From Octopus bimaculoides (lineage: Eukaryota), in contig NC_068985.1 in the NCBI RefSeq assembly GCF_001194135.2, positions 96,023,419 through 96,081,931 of the forward strand: a stretch of DNA of 58,513 nt, in the 5' to 3' direction. Below are positions 13,451 through 58,513 of the stretch, piece by piece. Positions within the stretch are counted from its first letter, which is position 1. Every line of letters begins with the position of its first letter. A model generated the notes under the pieces. The model saw only the letters and a list, made by a program, of their open reading frames with translations. It had not been told where the DNA came from and did not search any database. Position numbers and translations under genes: made by a program.

Positions 13451-13494
<44 letters not shown>

Positions 13495-13522: not shown

Positions 13523-13553
<31 letters not shown>

Positions 13554-13695
13554 TTACTACTACTATCACTACTACTACTACTACCACCACCACCACCACG
13601 ACTACTACTACTACTACCACCACCACCACCACCACCACCACTACTACTACTACTACCACCACCACCACCACCACCACTACTACTACTACTACTAT
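13404..13695. repeat. Compound (ACT)n/(ACC)n trinucleotide microsatellite
   Basis: Direct reading. It explains the poly-V and poly-S/G ORFs. Confidence 0.95.
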
Positions 13696-34647: not shown

Positions 34648-34782
34648 TTACACATTGGTACTCCGAGACTGTTGATTAGAAGGAAAATGAATAATAAATT
34701 CCTTATTGTTTTGTTTCACAATGAAGTCATGTTGACAAATTTCTGACTCTGATAAAATTGGTGAGGAAAATCTGGAGTCAAC
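34648..34782 (-). CDS. Ig-superfamily membrane protein, terminal coding exon (VDSRFSSPIL...QQSRSTNV*)
   Basis: Acceptor ctttatttcag. Phase 0 matches the upstream exon. 44 open codons to TAA at 34650-34648. Confidence 0.7.
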   Translation of the reverse strand, partial: VDSRFSSPILSESEICQHDFIVKQNNKEFIIHFPSNQQSRSTNV

Positions 34783-35346
34783 CTGAAATAAAGTAAACTT
34801 AGTGTTATACTTTCATATATACAAAATACATATTATTAACACATATTATTCTAACAGTATCATAAATAATATTTATAAATTTTGGTGGATGTTTAAAGAA
34901 AATGTGAGTGTGTGTGTGAGTGTGTATGTATGTGTATAATATATATATATATATATATATACATACATACATACATACATACATACATACACATACGAAA
35001 TGTTAGTGCCAAGCAGTGTTTAGGCATAAGCAAAATTCAGGTTGGTCAAAGTGCTTGTGGAACTCAGCCACTTTGCCTCTTTGAGGTCCAGTGCTTGAAA
35101 GGTGCTCTTTATATAAACACACACACACATGCTCATAAGAGATGCAAGCATGGCTTTGTAGTAGAAAGTTTGTTTCCTAATTAAAGGATATGGGGTTCAT
35201 TCCTGCTGCTTGGCACCTTGGGCAAGCGTCAACTATAATCCTGGGTTAACCAATGGCTTGTGAGTGAATTTGGAAGACAGAAACTGCACGACAAGTGGTA
35301 TTCCTAATTTTCAATCATAACCATACTGTAATCTCAAAACAAGGAG

Positions 35347-35378
<32 letters not shown>

Positions 35379-36020
35379 GTGTACGTACACACACACGCAC
35401 CAGCATAGAAGCCAAATGTTAAATGATGGTGATATATGATGGGCTTCTAACAGTTTCTATGTACCAAATTCATTACCTATGGACCCCTTTGGTTACTATT
35501 TTATTCTGGTGGACCCCTAGAGCCATTCATTGTTTAAAAACTAGTTTTATAGAAAGTTCTTTCAAAATTCCTATCTTGTTTTTCACACATTAACTTGTCG
35601 AAGTTGAAATATGCAAAATGTTAGAATACAAAACTAAGCTGTTTCTTGCAATAAATACATCTAAATCAAAAATTTTTTCATGGGCCCTTAATATACTAGT
35701 GTGGGTCCCTAATTCACTATTTTGCTTGTAAGGACCTCCAAAAATCTTATACAGAAAGGGATCATATGGTCCCTGGTTGAGAACTACTGCTCTACACAGT
35801 CACTAGACATTGCCAGAAATAGCAACCAGATCTTTATCATCCCACACTCTTCCTTAATAAGGTAAGAACATATGCATTAGATAATATATCACCCTAGGTA
35901 GACTGTGTCGAGATCAGACGAGATGGCATGGGCATTGCTTGAATGTTTTTGATCAAAGTACTGCTAGCTCAGAACAACAACAACTATAACAACAAATACA
36001 CAAAACATGTAACACTTTAC

Positions 36021-36069
36021 CTGGTCTTCCTGACTGTGTGGTCTTGGTTGGTCCTCTCTTATGTCTGTG
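36021..36069 (-). CDS. Ig-superfamily membrane protein, 49-nt cytoplasmic exon (TDIREDQPRPHSQEDQ)
   Basis: Acceptor caccattgcag and donor CAG|gtaaag. Phase 2 to 0, open frame. Confidence 0.7.
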
Positions 36070-36331
36070 CTGCAATGGTGAATGTTGATTTGTCAAAAAT
36101 TATTCACATATGACCAAAGAGAATAAATAAAAAAATCAGAAATATTATATAGAGATATGTGACATATTAGGCGCTGTGTGGTAAGTAGCTTGCTTACCAA
36201 CCACATAGTTCCAGGTTCAGTCCCACTGCGTGGCACCTTGGGCAAGTGTCTTCTACTATAGCCTCAGGCCGACCAAAGCCTTGTGAGTGGATTTGGTAGA
36301 CGGACACTGAAAGAAGCCCGTCGTATATATG

Positions 36332-36368
<37 letters not shown>

Positions 36369-37469
36369 NNNNNNNNNNNNNNNNNNNNNNNNNNNNNNNN
36401 NNNNNNNNNNNNNNNNNNNNNNNNNNNNNNNNNNNNNNNNNNNNNNNNNNNNNNNNNNNNNNNNNNNNNNNNNNNNNNNNNNNNNNNNNNNNNNNNNNNN
36501 NNNNNNNNNNNNNNNNNNNNNNNNNNNNNNNNNNNNNNNNNNNNNNNNNNNNNNNNNNNNNNNNNNNNNNNNNNNNNNNNNNNNNNNNNNNNNNNNNNNN
36601 NNNNNNNNNNNNNNNNNNNNNNNNNNNNNNNNNNNNNNNNNNNNNNNNNNNNNNNNNNNNNNNNNNNNNNNNNNNNNNNNNNNNNNNNNNNNNNNNNNNN
36701 NNNNNNNNNNNNNNNNNNNNNNNNNNNNNNNNNNNNNNNNNNNNNNNNNNNNNNNNNNNNNNNNNNNNNNNNNNNNNNNNNNNNNNNNNNNNNNNNNNNN
36801 NNNNNNNNNNNNNNNNNNNNNNNNNNNNNNNNNNNNNNNNNNNNNNNNNNNNNNNNNNNNNNNNNNNNNNNNNNNNNNNNNNNNNNNNNNNNNNNNNNNN
36901 NNNNNNNNNNNNNNNNNNNNNNNNNNNNNNNNNNNNNNNNNNNNNNNNNNNNNNNNNNNNNNNNNNNNNNNNGTCCTATTACAGGCATCTCTGTATTTTA
37001 AATGAATAATACATAGTCTATTGACTGTTTTTTACCCTCGCTAGACCACTGGTGGTAAATAAAATTTCTAAAATTTTTTTGCTACCCAGTATTTTATTGA
37101 TATATATATATATATATATGTATATATATGTGTGTGTGCTTGTCCCCCGATCATCGCTTGACAACTGATGCTGGTGTGTTTACATCCCCGTAACTTTGCG
37201 GTTTGGAAAAAAGAGATCGATAGAATAAGTACTAGGCTTCCAAAGAATAAGTCCTGGGGTTGATTTGCTCGACTAAAGGCGGTGCTCCAGCATGGCCGCA
37301 GTCAAATGACTGAAACGAGTAAAAGAGAGTAAAGAGTATGTTAATTCTTTAAATACAAATCCTTGATTAGTAAATTAAATTGATTGCCTGGTTAAACACC
37401 ATCATCTTGGGACCACAACCATTTAGACCTGGCCTCCAACAGGAGGATAATTTCCATCCTTCCTTCACA

Positions 37470-37692
37470 CCTGGCGAAATGCTTAGCAGAAACATTAGCA
37501 CACTGGGTGAAATGCTTAGCGGTATTTCGTTTGTCGTTACGTTCTGAGTTCAAATTCCGCCGAGGTCGACTTTGCCTTTCATCCTTTTGGAGTCGATAGA
37601 TTAAGTACCAGTTGCATACTGGGGTTGATCTAATTGACTGCTCCCCTCCCCCCAAATTTCAGGCCTTGTGCCTAGAGTAGAAAAGAATATTA
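37470..37692 (+). mobile_element. SINE family B (well preserved)
   Basis: aaatgcttagcggtatttcg...gaggtcgactttgcctttcatcc...ggccttgtgcctagagtagaaaag. Confidence 0.8.
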
Positions 37693-37884
37693 ATAACACA
37701 ATCTAATTCTGTTAAGGTTTGAATTTATCACCTATATATTGGTAATGCATCGTTTCTATCTACAAAAGTGGTTGACAGACCACATCAGGGTCACCAATCT
37801 GAATGATGTCCACCTCATAGTGTGATCTTTCTGTGGAAGACCAATACATGAGTTATAGATCTTAAGAGAAAATAGAAGACTTAC

Positions 37885-37906
37885 ACATTGTCCGTGTCTT
37901 TTCCAC
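37885..37906 (-). CDS. Ig-superfamily membrane protein, 22-nt micro-exon (GGKDTDNV)
   Basis: Acceptor ttttattttccag and donor |gtaagt. Phase 1 to 2 bridges the TM exon and the 49-nt exon exactly. Confidence 0.65.
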
Positions 37907-38345
37907 CTGGAAAATAAAATAATACAAATGTTATGAATCAGGATAAATAACTTGGGTGTGAAAAAGCTTATTTATGATTTTTAATGGCAATTCCTTTCCC
38001 ATGGCTACAAGTGTATTCTGGGAGCAGCAGCAGGAGAGAAATCGAGTTGGGGTATCAAACCAGATTATCAATATTGCATCATATCAAGGTGGTAAGCTCG
38101 CAGAATCATTACCATGCCAGGCAAAATGCTTGGTAACATTATGTACATCTTTACGTTCTGAGTTCAAATTCTGCTGAGGCTGACTTTGCCTTTCATCCTT
38201 TCGGAGTTGGTACAATAAGTACCAGTTGAGTACTGGGGTCCATGTAATTGATTCAACCCCTTCTTCTGAAGTTGCTGGTCATGTACTAAATTGTGAAACC
38301 AATATTACATCATATCTAAAGATAACGAGCTGACAGGAAAAATGC

Positions 38346-38571
38346 TTAACCCTTTCGTTACTGTATTTCTCTTGAGATGCTCTGTTTCTTTCAATTAATT
38401 TTAAATAAAACAATGAATTTAGTAAAATAACTTTATTATCATTAAGCTAGTGTTAGGAAAATAAATTGTGACTAAGGTTTGGTGGAAGATTTTAATTCAA
38501 AACTTATGAAAGCAAGACATTTGTACTACAGAGCTAGAGGCAGTTTCAGCCGGGTTGGTATCAAGAGTTAA
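38346..38571 (+). mobile_element. piggyBac-like MITE copy 1
   Basis: TTAA-ccctttcgttac...ggtatcaagag-TTAA. Confidence 0.75.
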
Positions 38572-38593
38572 GAATTGTTTCTATTATATATAT

Positions 38594-38823
38594 TTAACCC
38601 TTTTGTTACCATATTTCTGTTGAGATGCTCTGTGTTTCTTTCAATTAATTTAAAATAAAACAAAGAATTTAGTAAAATAACTTAGTTATCATTAAGCTAG
38701 TGTTAGGAACATAAATTGTGACTAAGGTTTGGTGGAAGATTTTAATTCAAAACTTATGAAAGCAAGACATTTGTACTACAGAACCAGAGATGGTTTCAGC
38801 CAGGTTGGTATCGAAAGGGCTAA
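38594..38823 (+). mobile_element. piggyBac-like MITE copy 2
   Basis: TTAA-cccttttgttacc...ggtatcgaaaggg-CTAA. Confidence 0.75.
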
Positions 38824-38835
38824 ATTAATAATTTC

Positions 38836-39058
38836 TTAACCCTTTTGTTACCATATTTCTGTTGAGATTCTCTGGGTTTCTTTCAAATAATTCTAAATAT
38901 AACAAAGAATTTAGTAAAATAAGTTAGTCACAATTTATGTTCCTAGCACTAGCTTAATGATAACCAAGGTTTGGTGGAAGATTTTAATTCAGAAAACAAG
39001 ACATTTGTACTACAGAGCCAGAGGTGGTTTCAAGCTGGGTTGGTATCAAAAGGGTTAA
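38836..39058 (+). mobile_element. piggyBac-like MITE copy 3
   Basis: TTAA-cccttttgttacc...ggtatcaaaaggg-TTAA. Confidence 0.75.
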
Positions 39059-39291
39059 TGGCATTTCGTCCATCTTTATGTTCTGAGTTCAAAACTCTGT
39101 TGAGGTCAACTTTGTCTTTCATCCTTTTGGGGTCAATAAAACAAGAACCGGTTGATCACTGGGGTGAATGTAATCAACCTCAAAATTGTTGACCTTCTAC
39201 CAAAATGTGAAGCTCAACATTTAGAGATCAAACCTCATCACTTCTTTCAAAAATTTCTGTGGTTTATTTTTTTTATTAAAATGACATTTAC

Positions 39292-39447
39292 CTTTCCATA
39301 GCCAAGGACAGATTCTCTGGAAATATTCCAAAACAACTTGTTTAGACTGAACACCATAGTATATTCCAGTTGTCAGAAGAACTATAATGGCTATAAAACC
39401 AATAATAGTCCCAACAAAAATTGCAGCATAAGAAACAGTGTTGGCAT
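39292..39447 (-). CDS. Ig-superfamily membrane protein, transmembrane exon (ANTVSYAAIFVGTIIGFIAIIVLLTTGIYYGVQSKQ...PWLWK)
   Basis: Acceptor ttttcttcag and donor AAG|gtaaat. Phase 1 to 1, with a ~23-residue hydrophobic helix. Confidence 0.85.
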
Positions 39448-40314
39448 CTGAAGAAAACAATGCGAAAGAGAAAGGGATTTTGGTAAACAGAAAGTAGAGC
39501 TTATATAGTATGGTCAGTCATAGTCAGGGGTGTAGCTAGGGTGGGGCAAGCAGGGCACATACCCTGGGTGCCACTTTGTGTGGGGTGCAGTTTTGGCAAA
39601 GATCATTTTCTAATTAAGCCTTTTCTATGCGAATTTCCACTTTTTGGGTGGTGGTGGTCGTGGTGGGATGTGTGTGTGTGTGCAATTTTAAGCTTTAATA
39701 ACTACCATGGTTGGCTACTATCCCTGATGATTATGACCAATGACTATGGCTGACCGCTAGGAGCAACCACTCTCATTGACTACTATAATTGACCATTAAC
39801 ATGACTGCTATGACCAATTCAATTGACCATGGTTGCTGGTCATTATGAATAATTACAACTCACCACTATCATTGACCACTACAACCAACGACCAAGACTG
39901 ACTACAAATGACTTCTGAGTGATAACTGAATGACCACTTTAAACATGTATGTCACAGTACCTACCATTACATTCCATTTTACCATACCATCATAGCAAAC
40001 CATCCCACACCAGTCCATCTTATCAACATAATGCTTAACATACCATACTACCATATCATACCAGACACACAGCTGATGTTAGATACAGAGAGGGCCTAGG
40101 GTCCCTCTTAACCCTCCACCCTCACAACTAGAATGATAAACACCCTTTACTCAAAGACTGTTGGCTTTAGCTCAGTCTGCCAAGCCTATAGGTCAATTCA
40201 GTACTGACCATACAATTCCTTATACCATACCATTTTACCATCATACCATTACATATTATATCTTTGTAATATTTACTTATATTGAAATCATTATCTCCTC
40301 TAGCATGCACTTAC

Positions 40315-40350
40315 TTTCAACTGGATATGTTGTATTCTTGATTCCAAGAC
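40315..40350 (-). CDS. Ig-superfamily membrane protein, 36-nt stalk exon (GLGIKNTTYPVE)
   Basis: Acceptor tctgcatttcag and donor AAA|gtaagt. Symmetric phase 1 to 1, open frame, NTT sequon. Not in the supplied ORF track. Confidence 0.7.
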
Positions 40351-41123
40351 CTGAAATGCAGAAATCAAAAGAATTAGTGGAATCATCATCATCATCATCA
40401 TCACTTTATATTTCCACCACCTGACCATCTTAATTATTAATGTCATTACAATCACTTCATTTTAACCATTAATGTCAACACCATCACCCCCACCTCCACT
40501 GTAATTACAACCTGACCATCTTAACTATTCGTGCAACAGCTACCATCACTGCCATTATTCCTTCACCACTGTCACAACCACCACCACCACCACCACCACC
40601 ATTGTCCCAGTTATCACTGCCATCTTTCTAATGTAGACCATTAATGTCAGCACCATGGACACTCCAACTATCGGCCCATCTCCACCACTATCCCCGTCAC
40701 TAGCAGCAGCACCACCACCACCCACATCATTATGGCCATTTTAAATGCTAAAGGGCTAAGATCAGTCCTAATCAGACTTTCCAGCCAGGACCATCTCTTC
40801 GTTTTTTTGTTTTTTTTCAGTCACTGCATCTAGGACCATGTTAGTCGAAATGTTTTCATGCTTTAAAATGGCAAGGTATGACTTAGGAGCCATTTGGCTG
40901 TTGTTTCTAGCAGAGCAAGTGACTATGTAGAGGCTTCTCTGCTATCTGAGAGGGAAGATATTTTAAGTAAGAGACATCAATTATCATAAACCAATTAAAC
41001 GCTAGAACTGTGTGACTAATTATACAATTTTGTTTGTTCTTTAAAAGATGACACTATAAAGAGCCCTAGATCATTTTGTCACTGAAATTTCAGTTGACTT
41101 GAACAAGTTTTTCCACTACTTAC

Positions 41124-41468
41124 CTAACACCTCTATTCTTTGAGCCAGGTTGATTTCTTTGTGTGCCATCGGACTAACAATCTCACAGCGGAACATCAAA
41201 CCAAGGTCCCAGACATTTGTCTTGTATACAATGACACTTGATCCTGACACCTGGCAGTTGTCCGTCTCCTCTGCGATGCTATCAATCTGTTTACCAAAAT
41301 ATTCTTGGAACACGTTGATGGTTTGGCGGTAGAATGACCATCGGAATCGACCATTTGGTTTGCCCAGTTTACCAGAGCATGTCAGAGAAATTTCCGTATT
41401 TTGCCAAACAGTCCAATCTGAGTGAAATGCATCAGAATAAATATTCAAAGATTCTATGAACGGTTTGG
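41124..41468 (-). CDS. Ig-superfamily membrane protein, Ig domain 2 (C2/I-like)
   Basis: Acceptor attatttcag and donor TAG|gtaagt. 345 nt, phase 1 to 1. Motifs LTCSGKLGKPNGRFRW and DLGLMFRCEI. Confidence 0.9.
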
Positions 41469-41744
41469 CTGAAATAATCACAGAAAAATAATCGATTAAC
41501 CATTTATATCAAGATATTGATTTCAGATTTTGCTTCAAGGACAGCAATTTTGCGGGAGGGGATAAATTGATTACATTGACCCCAGTGCTCAACTGGTACT
41601 TATTCTTTGTAAGCCTAGTACTTATTCTGTCGGTCTCTTTTGCTGAACTGCTATGTTGCGGGTATGTAAACATACCAACATCGATTGTCAAGGGATGACA
41701 AACACAGACATACAAATATATACATATATACCGTGTGACTGACC

Positions 41745-41935
41745 CTCTTTCCGGTGGCACGTAAAAGCACCCACTACACTCTCGGAGTGGTTGGTGTTAG
41801 GAAGGGAATTTCAGCTGTAGAAACTCTGCCAGATCAGATTGGAGCCTGGTGTAGCCTTTTGGCTTGCCAGTCCTCAGTCAAATCGTCCAACCCATGCTAG
41901 CATGGAAAGCGAACGTTAATCGATGATGATGATGA
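41745..41935 (+). mobile_element. Family E short retroelement
   Basis: ggtggcacgtaaaagcacccactacactctcggag...gatgatgatgatg. Confidence 0.75.
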
Positions 41936-42664
41936 CATATATATATATATCTACTATAATACTACTCTCGTGTTTTTCTCTGTCACAACACATGAATGAG
42001 AAAGGAAGGGGTGATAGATGAATAAGGAAGGAAGGGGTGATGGCAAACTGGTGGTAGGAGTGTTTCAACTCTATGAGTATATGTGTGTGTATGTAAAAGG
42101 GAGATATGTGAATGTGTGTGTGTGTGTGTGCGCAATGGAAGTGGAATGGTGAACATTCAATGCTGAAAAAAGAAAAATCAAACAGCGTTTCAACTCTGTG
42201 TGAGTATATGTGTGTGTTCGTGTACAAGGGAAGTATCTGAATGGATGTGTGAACCAGCATTCTTTCAGTAACAAACAATGATCGATGTCACATCTCAAAA
42301 GACAACCATTCGATAATATTGACAAGTGTATTAATTTGAATTACCATTCATTTTTATATATAAAATACAATTAGCCATCATTTTTGACAGTACAGGGCCA
42401 GCTAGTATCCACTTACAAGGCTTTGGTTGGCCTGAGGCTATAGTTGAAGACACTTACTCATGGTGCCATGTAGTGGGATTGAACCCACAACCATGTGGTT
42501 GGGAAGCAATCTTCTTACCTTAATTCTAAAAATATAATGGGATTTTTTTTTTTTTTAAACATGAAATTGTTATGGGGTTCTGAGGAAAATAGGGATCAAA
42601 GGGGTTTGCAGGTAGTGCAATGCTTATTTTATTTTTCTAAATTCCTCAATTTTATTGTTCTTAC

Positions 42665-43021
42665 CTTCTAAAATAGTATTTTCTGTCTGTGACTGAAAAG
42701 TTCCATAAGACGTTTGCATAGAACAGGAATAAACTCTTTGGTCAGAACATCGAGCTGGTGCCATTAATAATTCAACAACTGTATTGTCATCACTGGGACG
42801 GGATACTTCCACATGATGCTGAAGCTGTTGGTCAAGCCATGTGGTTCGGTTCTTCTCAATGTTCACCAAAAGAGTCCGTTCACCATTTTTAGCATTGGCA
42901 GCAAAGAATAAGATGCTGTAAATGTTGATGTTGTCTGGGAAAGAATTGACCAAACCTTGGCAGCGAACTGTCAATGTGTCTTCACCAATAACGGGTTTCT
43001 CGGGCAGAACAGAAAGTTCCA
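42665..43021 (-). CDS. Ig-superfamily membrane protein, Ig domain 1 (V-like)
   Basis: Acceptor ttttgtcttagttacag and donor AAG|gtaaga. 357 nt, phase 1 to 1. Motifs LTVRC and ARCSDQRVYSC (DxxxYxC). Confidence 0.9.
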
Positions 43022-43298
43022 CTGTAACTAAGACAAAAGGAATTGTAACATTTATTTCTTGTACAACAACATTGTTTTAAAAAGGATTAAGGATTAGAAA
43101 ATATTGGTGAAAGAAATGCTATGAGAAGTTCTGTAATTATTTCTATAAGCGTAAGAGTGGCTGTGTGGTAAGTAGCTTGCAATGGCTCCATGACTACTGT
43201 TTTGGCTATAACCTTGGAGCCCCAGTAATCTGTTACAGTACTTACCTTGCGTACCTGATCATTTAGATCACCTGTGAATTAAACCCCCATACTTTGTG

Positions 43299-43392: not shown

Positions 43393-44507
43393 NNNNNNNN
43401 NNNNNNNNNNNNNNNNNNNNNNNNNNNNNNNNNNNNNNNNNNNNNNNNNNNNNNNNNNNNNNNNNNNNNNNNNNNNNNNNNNNNNNNNNNNNNNNNNNNN
43501 NNNNNNNNNNNNNNNNNNNNNNNNNNNNNNNNNNNNNNNNNNNNNNNNNNNNNNNNNNNNNNNNNNNNNNNNNNNNNNNNNNNNNNNNNNNNNNNNNNNN
43601 NNNNNNNNNNNNNNNNNNNNNNNNNNNNNNNNNNNNNNNNNNNNNNNNNNNNNNNNNNNNNNNNNNNNNNNNNNNNNNNNNNNNNNNNNNNNNNNNNNNN
43701 NNNNNNNNNNNNNNNNNNNNNNNNNNNNNNNNNNNNNNNNNNNNNNNNNNNNNNNNNNNNNNNNNNNNNNNNNNNNNNNNNNNNNNNNNNNNNNNNNNNN
43801 NNNNNNNNNNNNNNNNNNNNNNNNNNNNNNNNNNNNNNNNNNNNNNNNNNNNNNNNNNNNNNNNNNNNNNNNNNNNNNNNNNNNNNNNNNNNNNNNNNNN
43901 NNNNNNNNNNNNNNNNNNNNNNNNNNNNNNNNNNNNNNNNNNNNNNNNNNNNNNNNNNNNNNNNNNNNNNNNNNNNNNNNNNNNNNNNNNNNNNNNNNNN
44001 NNNNNNNNNNNNNNNNNNNNNNNNNNNNNNNNNNNNNNNNNNNNNNNNNNNNNNNNNNNNNNNNNNNNNNNNNNNNNNNNNNNNNNNNNNNNNNNNNNNN
44101 NNNNNNNNNNNNNNNNNNNNNNNNNNNNNNNNNNNNNNNNNNNNNNNNNNNNNNNNNNNNNNNNNNNNNNNNNNNNNNNNNNNNNNNNNNNNNNNNNNNN
44201 NNNNNNNNNNNNNNNNNNNNNNNNNNNNNNNNNNNNNNNNNNNNNNNNNNNNNNNNNNNNNNNNNNNNNNNNNNNNNNNNNNNNNNNNNNNNNNNNNNNN
44301 NNNNNNNNNNNNNNNNNNNNNNNNNNNNNNNNNNNNNNNNNNNNNNNNNNNNNNNNNNNNNNNNNNNNNNNNNNNNNNNNNNNNNNNNNATAGGTCACAA
44401 CCAACCAAAGTGAGTGAATTTGGTCAGCAGAAACAGAAAGAAGCCTGTAGAGTGTGTTGGGGGTGTAGGTGTGTCCTGTTTTCAATTAATATATCTTTCC
44501 ATTTTAG

Positions 44508-44731
44508 GGCGGTGAGCTGGCAGAAACGTTAGCGCGCCGGGTGAAATGCCTAGCGTATTTTGTCTGCTGTTATGTTCTGAGTTCAAATTCTGCTGATGTT
44601 GACTTTGTCTTTTATCTTTTTGGGGGTCGATGAAATAAGTACCAGTTATGCACTGGAGTTGATGTAATAGACTTAATCCCTCTGTCCTTGTTTGTCCCCT
44701 CTGTTTAGCCCCCTGTGGGCAATAAAGAAAT
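44508..44731 (+). mobile_element. SINE family B
   Basis: ggcggtgagctggcagaaacgttagcgcgccgggtgaaatg... Confidence 0.8.
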
Positions 44732-45066
44732 AAATATATCTTTCCATATTTAAGATGGTATTGTGTGATTTGAGGGAAATTTTATCTTATTTCTAACAGA
44801 TCAAGCAAACATGTCCGTCCTCCTACATTGACTCTTCATTTTATTGTTTTATTGGCAGTGAAATCTTCATTGAGGAATGAAGTCAGTGGATTTGTGTTTT
44901 TGTATCAGTGGTTTGGAATATTGTCTCATGTGAATCAGAGTCTGCCCAGACAGGTGGGAAAGTGGGATGGAGAGGGTTTTAGAGATGATTTGATGAGAGG
45001 TGGGAGGAAATCAGCATTTAATCTGAAAATTATGAATGTCTACACTTGGTGTGAAGACGTGAGAAG

Positions 45067-45127: not shown

Positions 45128-48029
45128 TCTTGGATTAGATGGTTCCATACCTTTCGTATTAGCAGTGGCATTCAGCCAGAGTGGGTCGAGCCAGCTCTGA
45201 CCAACGAGTTCACCATGTCCCCCATGAATGCAGACCACATCTGACATTCACCTCCTAATGTTCCAGCAGGCAATGTAATACTTCTGCCATGTCTTGTTGT
45301 TTTGTTCCACTAATACTGCTCAGCCATTCAACAGATATCTCTTTGGTACTTTATGACCAAATCAGCAACAGAACAGGATTAACTTGGCTTAAATTAACAA
45401 ATTAATCCACCCAAGATTTCTTCATTAATAAATTTTTTTCAAAATAACAAAAATAAAATAAAGACTAATTAACTTACTGAAAGGGAAAGAAATAAATAAC
45501 CAATATTAGTGAATCGCTAATACTATTTTAATTATAAGAACAGTCAGGAATGGCATGGTTGGAAAAATATTGCTTTGTGAGATTTCTGTACATTCATCAT
45601 TATCATCATTTTGTATCAGCTCTCCATGTTGGCATGGGTGTGATAGGTTTATAGAATCCAGTGGATCAGGGGACTATTTCTGGCCCCAGTCCTCTATTTT
45701 TAGAATTATTCCAACCTCTGGATGTTTATCTTATCACCAAAAATCCAGTTTGCAGAGCAAGCACCTTGGATAGTGCTGTAGCCGTAGTCATTGTTCATTG
45801 CTGAGGTGTAGGGGTTATGTTTGGAGTTCATGTTCTGATGGTTCCAGAGGACCCAGCTAGCCTAAGTGCTGGTCTCCGACGTCTGTTTTTTATAAAGTCT
45901 CTATGGTTCGATGCCCTTCCAAATGCCAACTCCTTTACAGTGTGTCCAAGGTGTTTCTTTCATGGTACCAACATTAAGTGGGGTCACCAGGTACCTTGCA
46001 AGACAAGACTTCTTGACCGAGTGGAGACGCAGTATTAAGGGAGGTGGGTCTTATGCCAGGTGTAGAACGGTTAAAGCATGATAGCGGGGACAGGGACATA
46101 TGTTGCTCTAGAGGAGGTACATGGGTTCTCGAACAGGAAAAGGGAGAAAGGATGGTGAAGATGAGATGTCAGGGCTTACCCTAAAGGTACAAGAAAGAGG
46201 ATAGAGAGATAATAGGGGTAGAGAATTGAAGATGGCTGGATGGATGGATGGATCGGTAGGTTTGTGAAAAGAGAACACAAATGAAGGTCATTCTGAAATT
46301 AAAAATGAGAGAGATAGCTTATGTGTAGTGGTGGTGGGAGATAACTGGGTAATAAGGTGCAAAGTTAAGTAGATGATGTGGACGGGGAGAGAGAGAGGGG
46401 TGNNNNNNNNNNATGTTATTCAGTTTAACTAAAACACCACTTTACCCAACATACCATAAATGATGTAGAAACTGGTACAACACATCTAAATTTGGGTGGA
46501 GTTTTTTAAACTGAAGGTCCACACCATCAATCTCTCAGTTATGTGTCAACTGATGAAAGTAATGGAAACTGGTGTGGGGATGGGCGAATGAAATATTTTA
46601 CTTCAACAAGTCTTATCTCAATCATACTTCAAACCTGTCATGTGGTGTCAGTTAATACCTTTCACTTTCGTTATCTTTTAAGACATAAGACATCTGATAC
46701 GTGTAGCATTGAAGACATAGCTTTACTTATACATTCACTGAAATACAATATTTATATAAAATAAACTCCAATCACTACGTACACACCCACATACATTCAT
46801 ATACATACATGCATATACGCAGACACATATATATGCAACACCACCACCATCACCACCAACATATAGTTGCTTCCCCATGTTGACCCGTCTGACCCATGCT
46901 AGCATGAAAAAACATGCATAGAATGATGGCAGTGTGTGTGTGTGTGTGTGTTCATATACAATACAGACAAAAATGCATGTATGTACACACATGTATACAC
47001 ATACATACAAATATGTTTAGAATATATGTGTCTATGTGTGCCATGCTTGCATATGTGCATATATGTGTATGGATGTGTGTATGGATGTGTGTATGGATGC
47101 ATATATATATTAGACTTGTGATTGTAAGATTGTGGTTTCAATTCCTGGAGTGGGTGGTGTGTTATTTTCTATAACAAAGCACTTTATTTCACAAAGCTCT
47201 AATAAAAGTTGGTAATCCTGCTCTGAACTGGAACCCTGTCCAGGGAGGAATGTATATTCTGGAGAAAACAGGAAACTAACCCCGTTCTCTTTGTAGAGTC
47301 ATGAGGACTAACCGTGTGTGTGTATATAGTGTGTGTGTATATATATATATATATCTGTGTATATATGTGTATATATATGTATGTGTGTGAATGTGTGTTT
47401 ATGTACGTATATATGTGTGTATGTATGTGTGTGTATGTATGTATGTATATATTGAGTGTGTGGTACATGTGAATGAAAATCGCAGTATTTGTAATCAATG
47501 CTAAGACAGTCGAAGCTGTACTCCCCCACTGACACCACTAATTACAAGCAGGTGGCTTACGAAGAAATTATTAAAAGTAACCTTAAACAAATAGAAGAAC
47601 AGACTATTAAGAGTTTATATACACCACACCTTTTATGAGGGTGTGGTGGAGGCCATTGATAATTGATAATCTAAATTGGTCCAGGACTGAAAGAAACGAG
47701 AAGACGATGGAAAGATAATAGCAGAGACAAGAAAGTACGTACCTTGTTTGTGACGCTGGGAGGTTATTAGGAGAGGAACATGGAAGAGAACAATGAAATA
47801 CTGTATAAGACCAGTCATTTTTATAAAGACTGTCTGAGCTGTTGGGATTGATTTGACCAAAAGGCAGTGTGACAGTTGGACACAAACTGGCTTGGTAAAT
47901 GGAATAAATGGATTAGTATTTATTATGCAAAGTTTTACTTCGTGCTTTGTGAAGCTAGGGAGGTCATTAAAAACACACTTGTTTTAGTATCTTTAAAGAA
48001 CCATTTTAACGAATTCGGCATGAAGCAGG

Positions 48030-48450: not shown

Positions 48451-48984
48451 AAATTTAATCTTTTTCGATAAGTTCTTTGTTAGGGAAGCTTAATATTTCT
48501 GAGGCTTTAGTATTTCAAAATTAAGATAAGATCAAAAATGTCTATGTTGTATTTTTGTAAAAACAAACAAAAAACCCCTATAGCTGTAATGTAGGGCAGA
48601 TGAAACAAGATGTAAATTTAAAGAAAGGCCTCTACGATGATAACACACCCTTCTTTAGACGACCATTTAGATCAGTGGGGAGGAAGAGTTTATTTATCCA
48701 GATGACACCACACTACATTCTGACCTCCTCTGTTTACTCTGACATCATCTGGACTCCTCAGCAGATGTGAATCAACTTCTGTGAATAGAGAGAGAGAGAA
48801 AAACTTCAGAATCGTTTAACAATGGGGACATGTTAAACTACTTTCGTTTGATGACACTAAAACAGATACATGTCAAAATTACATGGTTTACTGTGAGTTT
48901 ATGAGGGTTCCTTGTATGTGACTGTTTGATATGCTAGAAAAGCTACTAAGTCTCTCTCAAATACACTTTAGCTACTTAGTGTTG

Positions 48985-49497
48985 TGGAAGGATCCTGACC
49001 ACCCCCACGTGACTGAAAGTCTGTGATGGCACCTGTATCAGTAGATCACTAAGAGCACCGTCTGAGCATGAGTGTTGCCAGAGCACCAGCTGTCTGACTT
49101 CCGTGCCAGTGGCGCGTAAATAGCACCATTTGAGCGTGATCGTTACCAACGTCGCTTTCCTGGCACTTGTGCCAGTGGCACGTGAAAAGACATTTGAGCG
49201 AGTTCGTTGCCAGTACCGCTGGACTGGCTCTTGTGCAGATTGCACGTAAAATACACCATTTTGATTGTGGCCGTTGCCAGTACCGCCTGACTGGACTTCG
49301 TACTGGTGGCACATAAAAGCACCCACTACACTCTCGGAGTGTTTGGCGTTAGGAAGGGCATCCGGCTGTAGAAACTCTGCCAAATCAGATTGAAGCCTGG
49401 TGCAGCCATCTGGTTCACCAGTCCTCAGTCAAATCGTCTAACCCATGCTAGCATGGAAAGTGGACGTTAAACGATGATGATGATGATGATGATGATG
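48985..49497 (+). mobile_element. Family E retroelement with internal ~60-bp tandem subunits and (GAT)n tail
   Basis: Repeated gagcgtgatcgttacc...gccagtggcacgt units, then the family E 3' end. Confidence 0.75.
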
Positions 49498-49699
49498 AAA
49501 GAAAGTGGTGAACTGTCTGTAGTTGACAGGGCTGATCGTCCATATTGGTAACTGAGTTAGTTTAATATTGTAATTCCATTTGGAGTAGTATGGAATGCAT
49601 TCTGGGTGAACATATTAATTCTGCAATAGGTTATTCCAGATAACCATATCCAAATGTTCATTTGGGCAATACTATTCTTACACCTGACGTGCACGACTC

Positions 49700-50030
49700 G
49701 TGTCATAACACTTAGTTCCCTCTGTGCTATGAGGTACATAAGACCACGACATGATTTCTCCAGCCAGTTCTGTTTTTCTGCCATTGTTCTTGGTCTCTTT
49801 TTAACTTCTCCACCCTTCTCATCTCCTTTCCTTTTGTCAATGGTCCTTCACCATGAGGTTTTAGGGTGCCCCGCTGCTCTTTTCCCCCTCAGGATGCCAC
49901 TTTAGTGCCACCATACAATTGCTTTCTTGATGTTGTCCGAGGATGTTGTCTGATCCAGTTCCAGTGTCTGCATCTTATTTCGGCTCTGATTCTGTTGATG
50001 TCGTCTCAGTTGTGTCATACGCTTTTTACA
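49700..50030 (-). pseudogene. RTE-like LINE ORF2 C-terminal fragment
   Basis: Minus frames give IRAEIRCRHWNWI... and AEKQNWLEKSCRGL, resembling RTE RRW.WIGH and A.DR..WR..V.GL. The frames are broken. Confidence 0.45.
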
Positions 50031-50677
50031 ATCTTAAAAAGACATCATGAATAATTCTGGCTTAAATATACAGAGTAAAAAGAAAAAAAAAAGCTGATCA
50101 TGACTGGGATATCTGTGACTATACTGGATCAAGACTGACCTAGGGCTAAACAACCACATGCTTCATCATATTTTCTTTTCAAGATTTATTCTGGTGTCGC
50201 ACACAATGCTTTGTGTTTATTCTGGTGCTTTATATTCTGAGATCAAATCTCGTCAATGTTAGCTTTGTCTTTCATCCTCCTGGGGTCCATAAAATAAAGT
50301 ACCAATCAAGTACTGAGAGTCAATGAAATCAGTTAATCCTCGCCCCCCCCCACTAATATTGCTGGCCTTGTGCCAAAATTTGCCACCCTCATCCAGGATA
50401 TTATTTTAAAGTTTCTTGGCTCATTGTATCGGATATGCCTGTAGCCCCTTGAATTCAACACCTCAATATCCTAGAGGAATAAACTCATAACATATTGGAC
50501 TGGACCTTTTTTTGCTTAGCCAAAGGCCATGAGTTCAAATCTACTTCAGGTAAATTTATTGCATTTCTGGTCTCAAGATACTTTATCCTACATTAACTAC
50601 TGTTCAACGATTATCAGAAACATGTAGCAGACCAGCTGAGGAGTATTTTGTTTGTTATGGTTTAGACCCCACCACAT

Positions 50678-50715
<38 letters not shown>

Positions 50716-52224
50716 GGGCTGATTTGATTCATTAAACTTTGAAGGAAGTGCTCCAGCCTGACCACAGTCCAATAACTAAAACAAGATATTTTAATAATTA
50801 CCTCCGGATTTTAATTTTCGAAAGTAATTAACACACACAAGCAGGTTAATTAGTTAAAAATATGGTAATGAATAGGTTAACCAGAGGAGGGTGCATGGGA
50901 AGTGTGTGCATTCATGCCTGTCGTGGAAACATTGTTTCATGGTGTGTGTATCTTATCTTCTGTTTGTTTCTGTCACTGAGCTGCAGCCATGCTGGGGCAC
51001 CACCTTGAAAGCTTAAGTCAAGCAAATCAACCCTTGCCAAACTACCAAGCCATGGGGTTGCAAACAAACCAACGCTGGCTGTCAAGTGATGGTGGGTGGG
51101 TTGGGGGTTACAAAGACAAACACATACATACATACTTATATATATATATATATGTACAGGTGTGCTGTGTGGTAAGAAGCTTGCTTCTCAACCACATGGT
51201 TCTGGGTTCAGTCCAACTGTGTGGCTTGAGAGAAGCTGATAAAGCCAGGGGCCACATCAGGTTCCATAGTCTGTTTTGATTTGGCTTGTACAGTTGGGGA
51301 CCCTTCTTATTGCCAGCCACTTTACAGAGTTTTCTGGGTGCATTTTATGTGACGCCAGCACCAGTGGGTTTTTACGTGGCACAAGCCCCAACATCATCAA
51401 GTAACTTGCAAGAAGAAAAAAAAAACCCCCAAAACCCCTAAAATGATTCTGGTCCTTTGTGCAATTTCCAATGCTGGTGGATGAAAAAGAAGGAACCCCC
51501 TTCTCAAAGGTTGGTGTAGTTTGAAGCAGTATACCATGAAAACGAAGTTATTTTCAATGTAGAAACCTGGTTTTGAATGGTTGTATTGGAGTGGATGTTG
51601 TTAAAAGAAGCCAAAGGCCAGGTGCTGGTGCATCCAATAAACAGACAACCAAACTCTCCAGGAAGAGATTTCTCTCTCGTCCACAACTTAATACCATCAA
51701 ACTAGACTTAAGCACCAACTGTTAAACTCTCCCCGTGGCTGTTTAGGAAGCATTTTACTTATATTTTTTCTCACATCTAAACACGTTTGCTTCAACTTCC
51801 TTATTTACACACACCAAGCAGACGTTAGATGACCATTATGATGATGATGATGATGATGACCACCATCACCAATAGATTGTCTGACTGTCTCTCTAAAGCG
51901 AGGAAATTTGACATTTATTTCATTTTTTCTTTTTCTTCTATAATCCTGCTTTACTTTATATCACATCTTCACACAGCACATATATTGGCCAGTGGGGGGT
52001 GGTTAAATAGGGTTTGAGACATTTTGGTGCTGCCTGTCTGGCATTGCTCATTCAACACCGACTTAATTGGCATCATTCGTTTTGGTGTCTCTCTTGTTCT
52101 CTCTCTCTCTGAGCATCTAATTAGGTTTCTCACTCACTCCCTCTCTCTTTCTTTCTTTGTTTCTCTCTCCTTCTCTCTCTCACTCTTCTTCGTTCTTTCT
52201 TTCTCTCTGTATATCTTTTACTGT

Positions 52225-52585
52225 TTTACTTGTTTCAATCATTAGACTGTGGCCATGTTGGGGCACCCCCTTGAAGAATTTTTAGTTGAATGAATCAACC
52301 CCACTAACTATTTTTTTCTCTTAGGCCTGGTACTTATTCTATCGGTCTCCATTTGCTGAACTACTAGGTTACAGGGATGTAAACACACCAACACTGGTTG
52401 TCAAGTAGTCGTTGGGACAAAAACACACACACACAAAGAATGGGCTTTTTTTTAGTTTCCGACTCCCAAATCCATTCACAAGGCTTTGGTTGGGTTGAGG
52501 CTAGAGTAGAAGACAATGGCCCAAGGTGTCACACGGTGGGACTGAACCGGGAACCATGTGGTTAGTAAGTAAGCTACTTACCACA
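52225..52585 (-). mobile_element. SINE family A
   Basis: Reverse-complement copy. Confidence 0.7.
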
Positions 52586-52854
52586 CAGCAACATCTACAT
52601 CTACATGCACATTTTGCAAGCACTTCTGTATGTGTTTGCCTTCTGCACATAGAAGAAATATTTCTGTGCAGTGAATCTACATTGACTGAAAGTCCAGCCA
52701 TGACCAGTCCATCTTTTCTAACAATTTGCATTCAGGGCTACTTTAACGGGTACATTCCTCCATTTTTAAGGTTTTTACTTTTCAATTTAATTTTTTCTTT
52801 TTCTTTTAGTTGAGCTCTAGGACTCATAAGATCATCAGAATATGACAATTAAAC

Positions 52855-53130
52855 ATCATCATCATCGTCGTTTAATGTCCATTTTCCATGCTAGCATGGG
52901 TTGGACGATTTCACCGAGGACTGGCAAGCCAGAAGGCTGCACCAGGCTCCAATCTGATCTAGCAAGGTTTCTACAGCTGGATGCCCTTCCTCACGCCAAC
53001 CACTCCGAGAGTGAAGTGGATGTCTTTTATGTGCCACCGGCATGAGGGCCAGTCAGGTGGTACTGGCATCGACCACATTCAGATGGTGCTTTTTAGGTGT
53101 CACTGGCACAGGAGCCAATCAGGTGGCACT
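52855..53130 (-). mobile_element. Family E short retroelement
   Basis: catcatcatcatcgtcgtttaatgtcc...ccatgctagcatggg... Confidence 0.75.
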
Positions 53131-54336
53131 ATAACATCCACCAATAATCCTTCCTGCAATAGGCACAAGGCCTGGAATTTTGTGGTGGAGGCTTGTAGAT
53201 TCCACCAACCCCAATACTCAACTGGTACTTATTTCATAGGTCCCCGAGAGGAGATTTCTTCCAGGTCTTTACTTTCTGAGAGTTGGCAATGTAATTGAAA
53301 GGAATTGAGAAGTGTGAGCTTTCAGAGGAAGCCAGGACTGTGATTCATTCTTAGAGTTTGACCTTGATTAAGCAGATTTATGATTGAACGTTCCAGCTGT
53401 GGCCAGCCCCACTTCTTTCTCGGGCAATGCATCCAGGGCTGCATTGATTAATATGTCTCTCACAAAAAACTTAGTTCAGATCTGGGCATGAATCCTGCCA
53501 TGGTCAACTTTGCCTTCTACTCTTTCAGGGTTGATGAAATAAATACCAGTCATGTTCTAGGGTTGATATAATCAACTTTCCCCTCCCCGTCAAGAGTGTA
53601 TGTTTTGTGTCAAAATAGCAGCAGTAATAATAATTCTTTTTAAAGGAAGTGGATTTGTAGAATTATCAGAACAAAATGGCAATTGGTATTTGTTCCAGTC
53701 CTTACTGTTTTGAGTTCAAATCTTGCTGAGATTGATAAAGCATCAGTCCCCTTAGGGGTCAATAAAATAACATTGTCAGTGAAGTTCTGTTATCGACTAA
53801 CCACCTTACTTTAATACATTATTATGATGATGATATGTGTGTGTGTGTGTGTGTATTTGTTTGTTCCCCACCGATGCTGGTGTGTTTATGTCACCATAGC
53901 TTAGCGGTTCAGCAAAAGAGACCGACAGAATAAGTACTAGGCTTACAAAGAATAAGTCCTGCGGTTGATTTCTTCGACTAACACCGTTTGAGGTGGTGCT
54001 CCAGCATGGCCACAGTCAAATGACTGAAACGAAAAAAGAAAGAAAAGCCATTATCTAACTTGATTAGATATCACACCTGACCCTTTAGTAAATGTTGCTA
54101 CAGGTGTTTGAGCAAGATACTTCACTCAACTTTCCTCCTATGGCTTCATTAATCTAATTACAGTTCTGGAGATAGAATAAATAACAAGAGAACAGTGACA
54201 GATAAGAAAGATGTTTGAACCCTGTTCTACAATGGTTCTGTATGAAAGCACTGGATGACAGTGCTGGCTTCAGTGTAAATATTATGGTGCGATAATCTCT
54301 GTTGAAATACACATGATTGTTAGCACTGATGCAGGC

Positions 54337-54369
<33 letters not shown>

Positions 54370-55859: not shown

Positions 55860-56310
55860 TCTTTTCTACTATAGGCACAAATCCTGATATTTGGGGGGAG
55901 GGGGCAAGTCGATCTCATTTACCTCAGTATGCAACTGGTACTTAATTTATTGACCCCAAAAGGATGAAAGGCAAAGTCGACCTCAGCAAAATTTGAACTC
56001 AGAATGTAGCAACAGGCAAAATAACGCTAATTATTTTGTCCAGTGTGCTAACGATTCTGCCAGTTCACCACTTGAGTGATAATAATAATAATAATAATTC
56101 TTTTTACTGGAAGCACAAGGCCTGAAATTTTGGGGAAGGGATTAAGTCAATTACATCGACCCCAGTGTGTAACTGGTACTTATTTAATTGACCCTGAAAA
56201 GATAAAAGGCAAAGTGAACCTCGGTGGAATTTGAACTCAGAATGTAGTGACAGATGAAGTACTGCTAAGCATGTTGCCTGGCGTGTTAATGATTCTGCCA
56301 GCTTGACCCC
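55860..56310 (-). mobile_element. Two head-to-tail SINE family B copies
   Basis: Two successive blocks ggcacaa...aaaggcaaagt...gaactcagaatg...gattctgccag, each preceded by (AAT)n. Confidence 0.75.
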
Positions 56311-57114: not shown

Positions 57115-57320
57115 GAGAGAAAGATAGTGAAAGAGTGAGTGAGTGAAAGAGTGAGTGAGTGAGTATGTGAGTGAAAGAGAGAGAGTGAGTATGTGAGTGA
57201 AAGAGAGAGTGAGTATGTGAGTGAAAGAGAGAGAGAGTGAGTATGTGAGTGAAAGAGAGAGAGTGAGTATGTGAGTGAAAGAGAGAGAGTGTGTGAGTGA
57301 GAGTGAGTGAGTGGAAGAGA
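57115..57320. repeat. GA-rich minisatellite, unit ~gagtgagtatgtgagtgaaagaga(ga)n, ~5 copies
   Basis: Direct reading. Confidence 0.85.
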
Positions 57321-58440: not shown

Positions 58441-58513
58441 CCAAGTCAGTTGATACTATTGGCCAGAGGGCTTGACTTGTACTTTGCTTTTCATCCTTTC
58501 AGGGTCAATTAAA

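What the first reader, a model, noticed from the sequence alone, without database searches (positions are those of the whole stretch)
34648..43021. Unnamed two-Ig-domain single-pass receptor with a class-I PDZ-binding C-terminus
Seen: seven exons splice in frame (phases 1-1-1-1-2-0) into ~366 aa comprising a V-like Ig, a C2-like Ig, a 12-aa stalk, a TM helix and an ~85-aa tail ending S-T-N-V. Four of these exons are absent from the ORF track. Established: V-C2-TM with a terminal S/T-x-V motif is the layout of CTX/JAM/nectin-like adhesion molecules, and V-type IgSF receptors also serve invertebrate immune and allorecognition roles. I do not recognise an orthologue. Inference: this is a lineage-specific molluscan adhesion or recognition receptor, possibly from an expanded family.
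Basis: partly seen in the sequence, partly recalled or inferred. Interest (0 to 1): 0.7.

Follow-up and report, generated by a model that had tools for sequence, protein, structure and literature searches.

The report
Octopus two-Ig-domain membrane receptor gene
This is a real, conserved octopus gene for a small cell-surface protein with two immunoglobulin domains. It belongs to an uncharacterised mollusc-wide family, and it is an ordinary kind of adhesion or recognition receptor whose partner and tissue are unknown.

Summary
On the minus strand they join through canonical AG/GT sites in phases 1-1-1-1-2-0 and end in S-T-N-V-stop.

Two corrections:
- A first coding exon (47743-47818, signal peptide) was missed.
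- The V-domain exon most likely starts 6 nt earlier (43027). The full ORF is 393 aa in eight exons.

The assembly gap (36369-36972) is harmless. It lies inside a repeat insertion in intron 6 that is absent from the gapless O. sinensis and O. vulgaris loci, which are colinear on both sides.

All eight exons, all splice sites and the open frame are kept in both species. dN/dS is 0.12-0.32, including the cytoplasmic tail.

The ectodomain is a V-set plus CD80-like C2 pair. The AlphaFold2 model has pLDDT 88, and its best two-domain fits are nectin-4 and B7-H6.

Relatives at 22-35% identity are almost all uncharacterised bivalve and gastropod proteins. They share an invariant six-cysteine V-C2 module, which may carry an interdomain disulfide (inferred, not shown).

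Octopus appears to have a single copy, so the family is not expanded there. The protein is not a nectin, CADM, JAM, CTX or Siglec member.

Adhesion or recognition with PDZ anchoring is an inference, and expression was not tested.

The parts
47743..47818 (-). Coding exon 1: start codon and signal peptide (MTGLIQYFIVLFHVPLLITSQRHKQ), phase 1 donor.
   Evidence: Matches the N-termini of P0001 and P0002. Conserved in O. sinensis and O. vulgaris, with 30 identical bases upstream of the ATG.
42665..43027 (-). Coding exon 2: V-set Ig domain with Cys48, Cys119 and Cys127 (full-length numbering).
   Evidence: Pfam V-set E = 2.7e-4, below the gathering cut-off. The AF2 model shows nine strands. The orthologue proteins read KQVTVELS.
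41124..41468 (-). Coding exon 3: C2-type Ig domain (TCSGKLGKPNGRFRW motif; Cys177, Cys218, Cys241). Phase 1-1, so skipping it keeps the frame.
   Evidence: Pfam ig PF00047 E = 3.7e-5, above the cut-off. 15 of 23 family members hit the CD80-like C2-set family. The exon is intact in O. sinensis even though its RefSeq model skips it.
40315..40350 (-). Coding exon 4: 12-aa stalk (LGIKNTTYPVEN) with an N-T-T sequon.
39292..39447 (-). Coding exon 5: transmembrane helix (residues about 275-307) and juxtamembrane segment.
   Evidence: Kyte-Doolittle segment 275-307, mean 2.73. 94-95% identical in the two other octopus species.
37885..37906 (-). Coding exon 6: 22 nt of cytoplasmic tail.
   Evidence: AG/GT boundaries kept in three species. 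The junctions agree with O. sinensis protein P0002.
36170..37338 (.). Species-specific repeat insertion in intron 6. It contains the assembly gap 36369-36972.
   Evidence: The flanks abut in L001 (28189/28184) and L002 (29378/29374). The inserted sequence matches multi-copy repeats.
36021..36069 (-). Coding exon 7: 49 nt of cytoplasmic tail.
   Evidence: Its junctions appear in P0002.
34648..34782 (-). Coding exon 8: the end of the tail, ...QQSRSTNV plus TAA stop (34648-34650).
   Evidence: The last four codons differ from the other two species only by synonymous changes: AGT to AGC and AAT to AAC.
43393..44389 (.). Assembly gap in intron 1. A second 10-N gap lies at 46403-46412, also in intron 1.
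   Evidence: Colinear blocks flank it in O. sinensis, and the O. sinensis model has no exon between exons 1 and 2.

Best explanation
This is a functional, single-copy octopus gene with eight coding exons on the minus strand (47818 down to 34648). It encodes a 393-aa type I membrane glycoprotein: signal peptide, V-set Ig, CD80-like C2 Ig, 12-aa stalk, one TM helix and an 86-aa cytoplasmic tail.

Shown:
- The gene model.
- Its conservation under purifying selection in three Octopus species.
- The two-Ig fold.
- Membership of a mollusc-wide, so far uncharacterised family built from a V-C2 module with six invariant cysteines.

Inferred:
- It sits in the plasma membrane as a rod-like two-domain ectodomain. 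The two extra cysteines (Cys119 in the D1 E-F turn, Cys218 in the D2 loop before strand E) may bond to each other and stiffen it.
- It binds a partner on another cell or surface through the membrane-distal V domain, as nectins and B7 proteins do.
- It is tethered to a PDZ scaffold through its C-terminal -S-T-N-V.

In short, it is an adhesion or recognition receptor, not an enzyme or a secreted effector.
For: - Gene model: canonical splice sites and an open frame.
- Orthologues at 93-95% identity in O. vulgaris and O. sinensis; the latter has the same tail and the same exon 5-6-7-8 junctions.
- All exons, splice sites and the 393-codon frame are kept in both genomes.
- CDS identity is 95.4%, against about 84-89% for intron blocks.
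- dN/dS is 0.12-0.32 overall and 0.12-0.23 in the tail. The deficit of non-synonymous changes gives P = 1e-6 to 7e-13 overall and 3e-4 to 2e-3 in the tail.
- Pfam ig and V-set hits.
- AF2 with the family alignment gives pLDDT 87.8 and pTM 0.76, with a nine-strand D1.
- Foldseek: nectin-4 D1-D2 and B7-H6 are the only top hits that fit both domains at once (TM 0.65-0.73, rmsd about 4.2 A). Fabs fit at TM about 0.4.
- The family profile hits CD276 (7.7e-25) and nectin-1 (4.7e-14).
- Six invariant Cys in 48 of 50 complete units. The ectodomain has exactly six Cys, so two are left over after the canonical B-F pairs.
- Hydrophobic segments at 1-20 and 275-307.
- T at -2 and V at 0 fit the class-I PDZ-binding consensus (established knowledge). 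These codons show only synonymous changes between species.
Against: - There is no expression evidence. No transcript-derived (Logan) sequence was found in either protein search, and RNA-seq could not be queried.
- The two public orthologue models disagree. The O. sinensis model skips the C2 exon. The O. vulgaris model replaces exons 7-8 with an exon 8 kb downstream.
- A [ST]-x-[VIL] C-terminus arises by chance in a few percent of proteins, and most distant relatives lack it. The three octopus species are too close for its retention to mean much.
- Some relatives carry an extra C2 copy with an unpaired extra Cys, and two units lack the canonical F-strand Cys. This leaves other pairings open.
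- No ligand, tissue or homophilic binding is known.
Confidence: 0.6

Rival explanations
1. It is an immune receptor (pattern-recognition or regulatory) on haemocytes, not a cell-cell adhesion molecule. It would bind microbial or damage ligands through the V domain.
For: Its relatives are diversified and multi-copy in bivalves and gastropods, with variable numbers of V-C2 units and with TM, GPI-like or secreted forms. That pattern is common in invertebrate immune gene families. The best PDB profile hit is the B7-family protein CD276.
Against: The tail has no ITIM or ITAM motif; its only tyrosines are at 303, 304 and 315, next to the membrane. The gene is single-copy in octopus. Ig1 is under purifying selection (dN/dS 0.04-0.35). 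The B7 hit is no better per unit than nectin-1 or antibody light chains.
Confidence: 0.2
2. The ectodomain gene is real, but the reader's 3' end is wrong. Exons 6-8 (or 7-8) would not belong to the main transcript, so the S-T-N-V terminus is not the protein's real end.
For: The O. vulgaris model (P0001) leaves exon 6 for a terminal exon 8 kb downstream. Exons 6 and 7 are tiny (22 and 49 nt). No transcript data were available.
Against: The O. sinensis RefSeq protein uses exactly exons 5-6-7-8 and ends QQSRSTNV. Exons 7-8, their splice sites and their frame are intact in O. vulgaris too. Tail dN/dS is 0.12-0.23, with P = 3e-4 to 2e-3. The O. vulgaris alternative exon has no counterpart in the window or in O. 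sinensis.
Confidence: 0.1
3. It is a true orthologue or member of a vertebrate-defined family (nectin, CADM/Necl, JAM/CTX or B7), as suggested by NCBI's automatic names for relatives such as 'cell adhesion molecule 1/2/3-like'.
For: The two-domain fold is most like nectin-4 and B7-H6. D2 of the family is of the CD80-like C2-set type shared by nectins, CADMs and B7. Some relatives carry automatic CADM-like names.
Against: The octopus ectodomain alone has no significant PDB sequence hit; the best is E = 0.012, to a nanobody. The family profile scores antibody light chains, SIRP-alpha, CEA, nectin-1 and CD276 alike per unit, which is generic IgSF similarity. Domain number, C-terminal motif and family cysteine pattern all differ (see the membership table). 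A 2026 survey places the origin of nectins and butyrophilins in gnathostomes and CADMs in vertebrates (PMC13262535).
Confidence: 0.05
4. It is a decaying or never-expressed relic, and the reading frame is a chance survival.
For: No transcript-derived sequences were found. No protein encoded by the window was listed in the protein collection.
Against: An intact 393-codon frame and 14 conserved splice sites in three species, with dS of 0.04-0.16 and dN/dS of 0.12-0.32.
Confidence: 0.05

Closest known systems
Uncharacterised Octopus orthologues: O. sinensis LOC118763481 (P0002) and the O. vulgaris 'Hypothetical predicted protein' (P0001)
   Same: 93-95% protein identity, the same eight exons and splice sites, and colinear loci.
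   Different: The public models are isoform or annotation variants: P0002 lacks the C2 exon and P0001 has a different terminal exon. Neither has a name or a known function.
Mollusc V-C2 proteins of bivalves and gastropods (Pecten 'cell adhesion molecule 3-like' XP_033758322, Lottia LOTGIDRAFT_228571, Mytilus, Patella, Pomacea, Haliotis and others)
   Same: The same V-C2 module with six invariant Cys: C-x-D-x3-Y-x-C in D1; TCxGxxGxP...W in D2; and the extra D2 Cys 23 residues before the F-strand Cys in nearly every unit. Many are single-pass membrane proteins.
   Different: Identity is only 22-35%. They carry one to six V-C2 units, some with further Ig domains. Tails and C-termini are unrelated, some are GPI-like or secreted, and there are many paralogues per species against one in octopus.
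Nectins (e.g. nectin-4 D1-D2, PDB 4frw; nectin-1, 3alp)
   Same: Best whole-unit structural fit (TM 0.66-0.73). V domain followed by a CD80-like C2 domain. Type I membrane protein with a PDZ-binding type C-terminus.
   Different: Nectins have three Ig domains and an E/A-x-Y-V afadin-binding end (own knowledge). They lack the two extra cysteines. No specific sequence relationship was found.
B7 family (CD276/B7-H3, B7-H6)
   Same: Top hit of the family profile in the PDB (7.7e-25 over two V-C units) and an equal structural fit. V-C units that can be tandemly duplicated, as in 4Ig-B7-H3 and in the multi-unit mollusc relatives.
   Different: B7-H3 has Val where the family has the extra D1 Cys (alignment). 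B7 tails are unrelated. B7 ligands are regarded as jawed-vertebrate families.
JAM / CTX family (JAM-A, CAR, ESAM)
   Same: Two-domain V-C2 ectodomain, single TM helix and a PDZ-binding C-terminus.
   Different: JAMs carry class-II type ends and an R-[VIL]-E dimerisation motif in D1 (own knowledge). Octopus D1 has none, and its only R-I-E is in strand G of D2. CTX-type genes split each Ig domain over two exons and have an extra disulfide within C2 (own knowledge). Here each Ig is one exon and D2 has a single extra Cys.

Membership tests
Immunoglobulin superfamily, V-set + C2-set ectodomain | Two Ig folds with B-strand and F-strand Cys, Trp in strand C, and D-x-x-x-Y-x-C at strand F | tested here: met
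   Pfam ig E = 3.7e-5 (above cut-off); V-set E = 2.7e-4 (below cut-off). AF2 pLDDT 87.8, with a nine-strand D1 and a seven- to eight-strand D2. Invariant C, W and DxxxYxC columns.
Mollusc six-cysteine V-C2 family (unnamed; defined here) | C-x-D-x3-Y-x-C in D1; C-x-G-x2-G-x-P...W in D2; an extra D2 Cys about 23 residues before the F-strand Cys; all six Cys present | tested here: met
   The window protein has Cys48, 119, 127, 177, 218 and 241 with exactly this spacing. 48 of 50 complete units in relatives have all six.
Mollusc six-cysteine V-C2 family | The extra cysteines form an interdomain disulfide | not testable with these tools
This is inferred from the cysteine count and from loop positions in the DSSP string.
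Nectin | Three extracellular Ig domains (V-C2-C2) | tested here: not met
   There are only two Ig exons between the signal peptide and the stalk.
Nectin | C-terminal E/A-x-Y-V afadin-binding motif (own knowledge) | tested here: not met
   The C-terminus is S-T-N-V.
Nectin | D1-D2 fold and arrangement | tested here: met
   Foldseek hit to 4frw: TM 0.66-0.73, rmsd 4.2-4.3 A. This is a resemblance, not proof of homology.
CADM / nectin-like (SynCAM) | Three Ig domains, a juxtamembrane protein-4.1-binding motif and a class-II EYFI end (own knowledge) | tested here: not met
   Two Ig domains and a tail ending STNV. The 'CADM-like' labels on relatives are automatic names.
JAM | V-C2 two-domain ectodomain with one TM helix | tested here: met
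JAM | R-[VIL]-E dimerisation motif in D1 and a class-II PDZ end (own knowledge) | tested here: not met
   There is no R-[VIL]-E in residues 26-148, read directly from the sequence. The end is class-I type.
CTX family | Each Ig domain split over two exons, and an extra intradomain disulfide in C2 (own knowledge) | tested here: not met
   Each Ig domain is encoded by one exon. D2 has one extra Cys, not two.
B7 family | Specific sequence relationship to B7 V-C units | tested here: inconclusive
   CD276 is the top profile hit, but each unit scores only 42-46 bits. Nectin-1 scores 55 bits and light chains 55-60 bits.
Siglec | Intra-sheet B-E disulfide in D1 in place of the canonical B-F pair, and an essential F-strand Arg (own knowledge; the CD33 D1 disulfide Cys41-Cys101 is) | tested here: not met
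   D1 keeps the canonical D-x3-Y-x-C F-strand Cys. The position two residues before the conserved Tyr is not conserved as Arg in the family.
Class-I PDZ-binding C-terminus | [S/T]-x-hydrophobic-COOH | tested here: met
   The sequence ends -T-N-V-stop in three species, with only synonymous changes in the last four codons. Actual PDZ binding cannot be tested here.

The most novel reading that the evidence does not exclude
The octopus gene may be the sole cephalopod member of an undescribed mollusc-wide IgSF family. Its building block would be a V-C2 module locked by an interdomain disulfide between the D1 E-F turn and the D2 D-E loop. That module would be used once in octopus but multiplied and diversified, up to six tandem units and many paralogues, in bivalves and gastropods as a recognition repertoire.
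Probability: 0.3. Interest if true: 0.5.

Novelty: new member of a known kind. Interest (0 to 1): 0.3.

Why it matters
The result gives a complete, corrected gene model for a gene whose public orthologue models disagree with each other. No protein encoded by the window was listed in the protein collection.

It also ties that gene to a recognisable but unstudied mollusc IgSF family with a sharp cysteine signature. If the interdomain disulfide and the bivalve and gastropod diversification hold up, the family would be a candidate for lophotrochozoan cell-recognition or immune studies.

For octopus biology alone it is one more ordinary IgSF surface receptor.

Tried and rejected
P0001 lacks exons 7-8, so the tail was searched only by the word-indexed search.
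- Single-sequence AlphaFold2 was useless (pLDDT 33). The run with the family alignment worked.
- The profile search of the 5.8-billion-protein collection returned only 5 hits because of its word filter.
- The octopus ectodomain alone has no significant PDB hit.
- A paralogue search within the window and in the orthologous loci found none.
- Ten other long ORFs of the window have no Pfam domain, and no tRNA was found.
- The literature has nothing on LOC118763481 or on this family in an invertebrate IgSF review.
- Co-loss of the two extra cysteines could not be used as a test, because they are essentially never lost.
- Rejected: membership of the nectin, CADM, JAM, CTX or Siglec families; diversifying selection on Ig1; and any effect of the gap on the reading frame.

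Full report
**What is there.** The feature lies on the minus strand.
- 42665-43021
- 41124-41468
- 40315-40350
- 39292-39447
- 37885-37906
- 36021-36069
- 34648-34782

Each internal exon is flanked by AG and GT. The phases are 1-1-1-1-2-0, and the joined frame is open until TAA at 34648-34650, ending ...QQSRSTNV. Exons 4, 6, 7 and 8 give no ORF of 30 aa or more in the mechanical ORF list.

**Two corrections.**
- The first search found two close relatives: an O. vulgaris 'hypothetical predicted protein' (P0001, 95% identity) and O. sinensis LOC118763481 (P0002, 93%). Both start MTGL...ITSQRHKQVTVELS. That N-terminus is encoded in the window at 47743-47818 (ATG...CAAG|GTACGT, phase 1).

The complete ORF is 1182 nt, or 393 aa, in eight coding exons.

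**The gap.** The 604-N gap (36369-36972) lies in intron 6. It is 916 nt from exon 6 and 299 nt from exon 7. I fetched the gapless orthologous loci of O. sinensis (L001) and O. vulgaris (L002).
- Both loci are colinear with the window across the whole gene.
- Window positions 37338 and 36169 abut in both (L001 28189/28184; L002 29378/29374).
- The 1.17-kb stretch that holds the gap is therefore an insertion specific to the window's species. Its readable parts match multi-copy repeats.
- No orthologous sequence is missing, order and orientation are confirmed, and exon 6 joins exon 7 in frame exactly as in the O. sinensis protein.
- The two other gaps (43393-44389 and 46403-46412) lie in intron 1.

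**Is it a real gene?**
- All eight exons, all 14 splice sites, the start, the stop and the 393-codon frame are kept in both other species.
- Coding identity is 95.4%, against about 84-89% for intron blocks.
- Nei-Gojobori dN/dS is 0.24, 0.12 and 0.32 for the three pairs. The tail gives 0.12-0.23, Ig1 0.04-0.35 and Ig2 0.11-0.13.
- The deficit of non-synonymous changes is significant overall (P = 1e-6 to 7e-13) and in the tail alone (3e-4 to 2e-3).
- So the small tail exons are coding, and Ig1 shows no sign of diversifying selection between species.
- Expression itself was not tested. No transcript-derived sequences turned up in either protein search.

**What the protein is.**
- Pfam gives 'ig' (E = 3.7e-5, above cut-off) for domain 2 and V-set (2.7e-4, below cut-off) for domain 1.
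- Hydropathy shows an N-terminal signal-like segment (1-20) and one TM segment (275-307). That leaves an 86-aa tail with no ITIM or ITAM motif.
- A full scan of 1.84 billion representatives with P0001 found 37 proteins at E of 1e-3 or below. Apart from the two octopus orthologues, 30 have a source that names an organism. Of these, 29 are bivalve or gastropod proteins at 22-35% identity. Most are 'uncharacterized', and a few carry automatic names such as 'cell adhesion molecule 1/2/3-like'. The other is a frog Fc-receptor-like protein, a generic Ig match. The remaining five have no name, or were not looked up.
- No second cephalopod protein and no paralogue in the window or the orthologous loci was found. 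In octopus the gene looks single-copy.

**The family signature.**
- An alignment of 23 V-C2 units (A1) has ten invariant columns. In D1 these are the B-strand Cys and C-x-D-x3-Y-x-C. In D2 they are C-x-G-x2-G-x-P...W, an extra Cys and the F-strand Cys.
- 48 of 50 complete units in the relatives carry all six cysteines. The extra D2 Cys sits 23 residues before the F-strand Cys in nearly every unit.
- The octopus ectodomain has exactly six cysteines. After the two canonical B-F pairs, Cys119 and Cys218 are left over.
- In the model's secondary structure, Cys119 is in the short turn before strand F, at the bottom of D1. Cys218 is in the loop before strand E, at the top of D2.
- I therefore infer an interdomain disulfide. 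I could not measure it, because no coordinates were available.
- There are counter-indications. Some relatives have an extra C2 copy with an unpaired extra Cys, and two Argopecten units lack the canonical F-strand Cys.

**Structure.**
- With alignment A1, AlphaFold2 gives pLDDT 87.8 and pTM 0.76. Without the alignment it gave 33.
- In Foldseek against the PDB, only nectin-4 D1-D2 (4frw) and B7-H6 (3pv6, 6yjp) fit both domains together (TM 0.65-0.73, rmsd about 4.2 A). Fab chains fit only domain by domain (TM about 0.4).
- The family profile's best PDB sequence hit is CD276/B7-H3 (7.7e-25 over two units). Per unit, that is 42-46 bits, no better than nectin-1 (55 bits) or antibody light chains.
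- The octopus sequence alone hits nothing significant.
- 15 of 23 family members match Pfam's CD80-like C2-set family in D2.
- The similarity to nectin and B7 is therefore architectural and generic to IgSF proteins. It is not evidence of membership.

**How it most likely works.**
- Shown: it is a conserved type I membrane protein with a V-C2 ectodomain.
- Inferred from the families it resembles: the membrane-distal V domain binds a partner on another cell or surface.
- Inferred: the short glycosylated stalk and possibly disulfide-locked domains hold it as a rigid rod.
- Inferred: the -S-T-N-V end, which fits the class-I PDZ consensus and shows only synonymous changes in its last four codons, tethers it to a PDZ scaffold.

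The PDZ motif is weak evidence. Such ends occur by chance in a few percent of proteins, most distant relatives lack one, and the three species are close.

**Comparison with known families.**
- It fails the defining features of nectins (three Ig domains, E/A-x-Y-V end).
- It fails those of CADMs (three Ig domains, 4.1 motif, EYFI end).
- It fails those of JAMs (R-[VIL]-E in D1, class-II end).
- It fails those of CTX proteins (split-exon domains, an extra intradomain C2 disulfide).
- It fails those of Siglecs (B-E disulfide, essential Arg).
- The B7 test is inconclusive.
- A 2026 survey dates nectins and butyrophilins to jawed vertebrates and CADMs to vertebrates (PMC13262535).
- An invertebrate IgSF review does not mention this family (PMC11999971), and no paper mentions LOC118763481.

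**Verdict.** It is a new, uncharacterised member of a known kind, an IgSF single-pass receptor. It has orthologues already in databases and a modestly interesting family-level cysteine signature. The 'expanded family' idea holds for bivalves and gastropods but not for octopus.

Noticed in passing
window 38345-39049: A 250-nt unit repeated 2.9 times in tandem (83% matches) inside intron 5.
   Followed up: partly
window 36173-36368, 37100-37336, 37486-37700, 38085-38262, 39047-39182, 41729-41958, 44503-44736: SINE-like multi-copy repeats fill the introns. Each has several copies within the 41-kb O. sinensis locus. ARAGORN finds no tRNA-like gene in the window.
   Followed up: partly
window 43021-43029: Two acceptor AGs lie 6 nt apart at the start of the V-domain exon. 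The orthologue proteins use the upstream one, which adds Val-Thr. Alternative use would add or remove two residues just after the signal peptide.
   Followed up: partly
L001 20750-21100 (O. sinensis): The RefSeq protein of O. sinensis (P0002) skips the C2-domain exon although the exon is intact in its genome. Skipping keeps the frame (phase 1-1) but would leave Cys119 without its proposed partner. It is either a real isoform or a model artefact.
   Followed up: partly
L002 40190-40258 (O. vulgaris): The O. vulgaris protein model ends in an exon 8 kb downstream of exon 8. That exon has no counterpart in the window or in O. sinensis, while exons 7-8 are intact in O. vulgaris. This is probably an annotation artefact.
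   Followed up: yes
P0003 units 96-339 and 348-590 (Argopecten irradians): Two V-C2 units replace the canonical F-strand Cys of D1 with Phe but keep both 'extra' cysteines. This hints that disulfide pairing in the family may not be the simple scheme assumed.
   Followed up: no
window 1-34000 and 48500-58513: No other gene was recognised. Ten long ORFs have no Pfam match, and much of the sequence is microsatellite or low-complexity, for example a trinucleotide-type run of about 350 nt at 13372-13723. There are eleven assembly gaps in all.
   Followed up: partly
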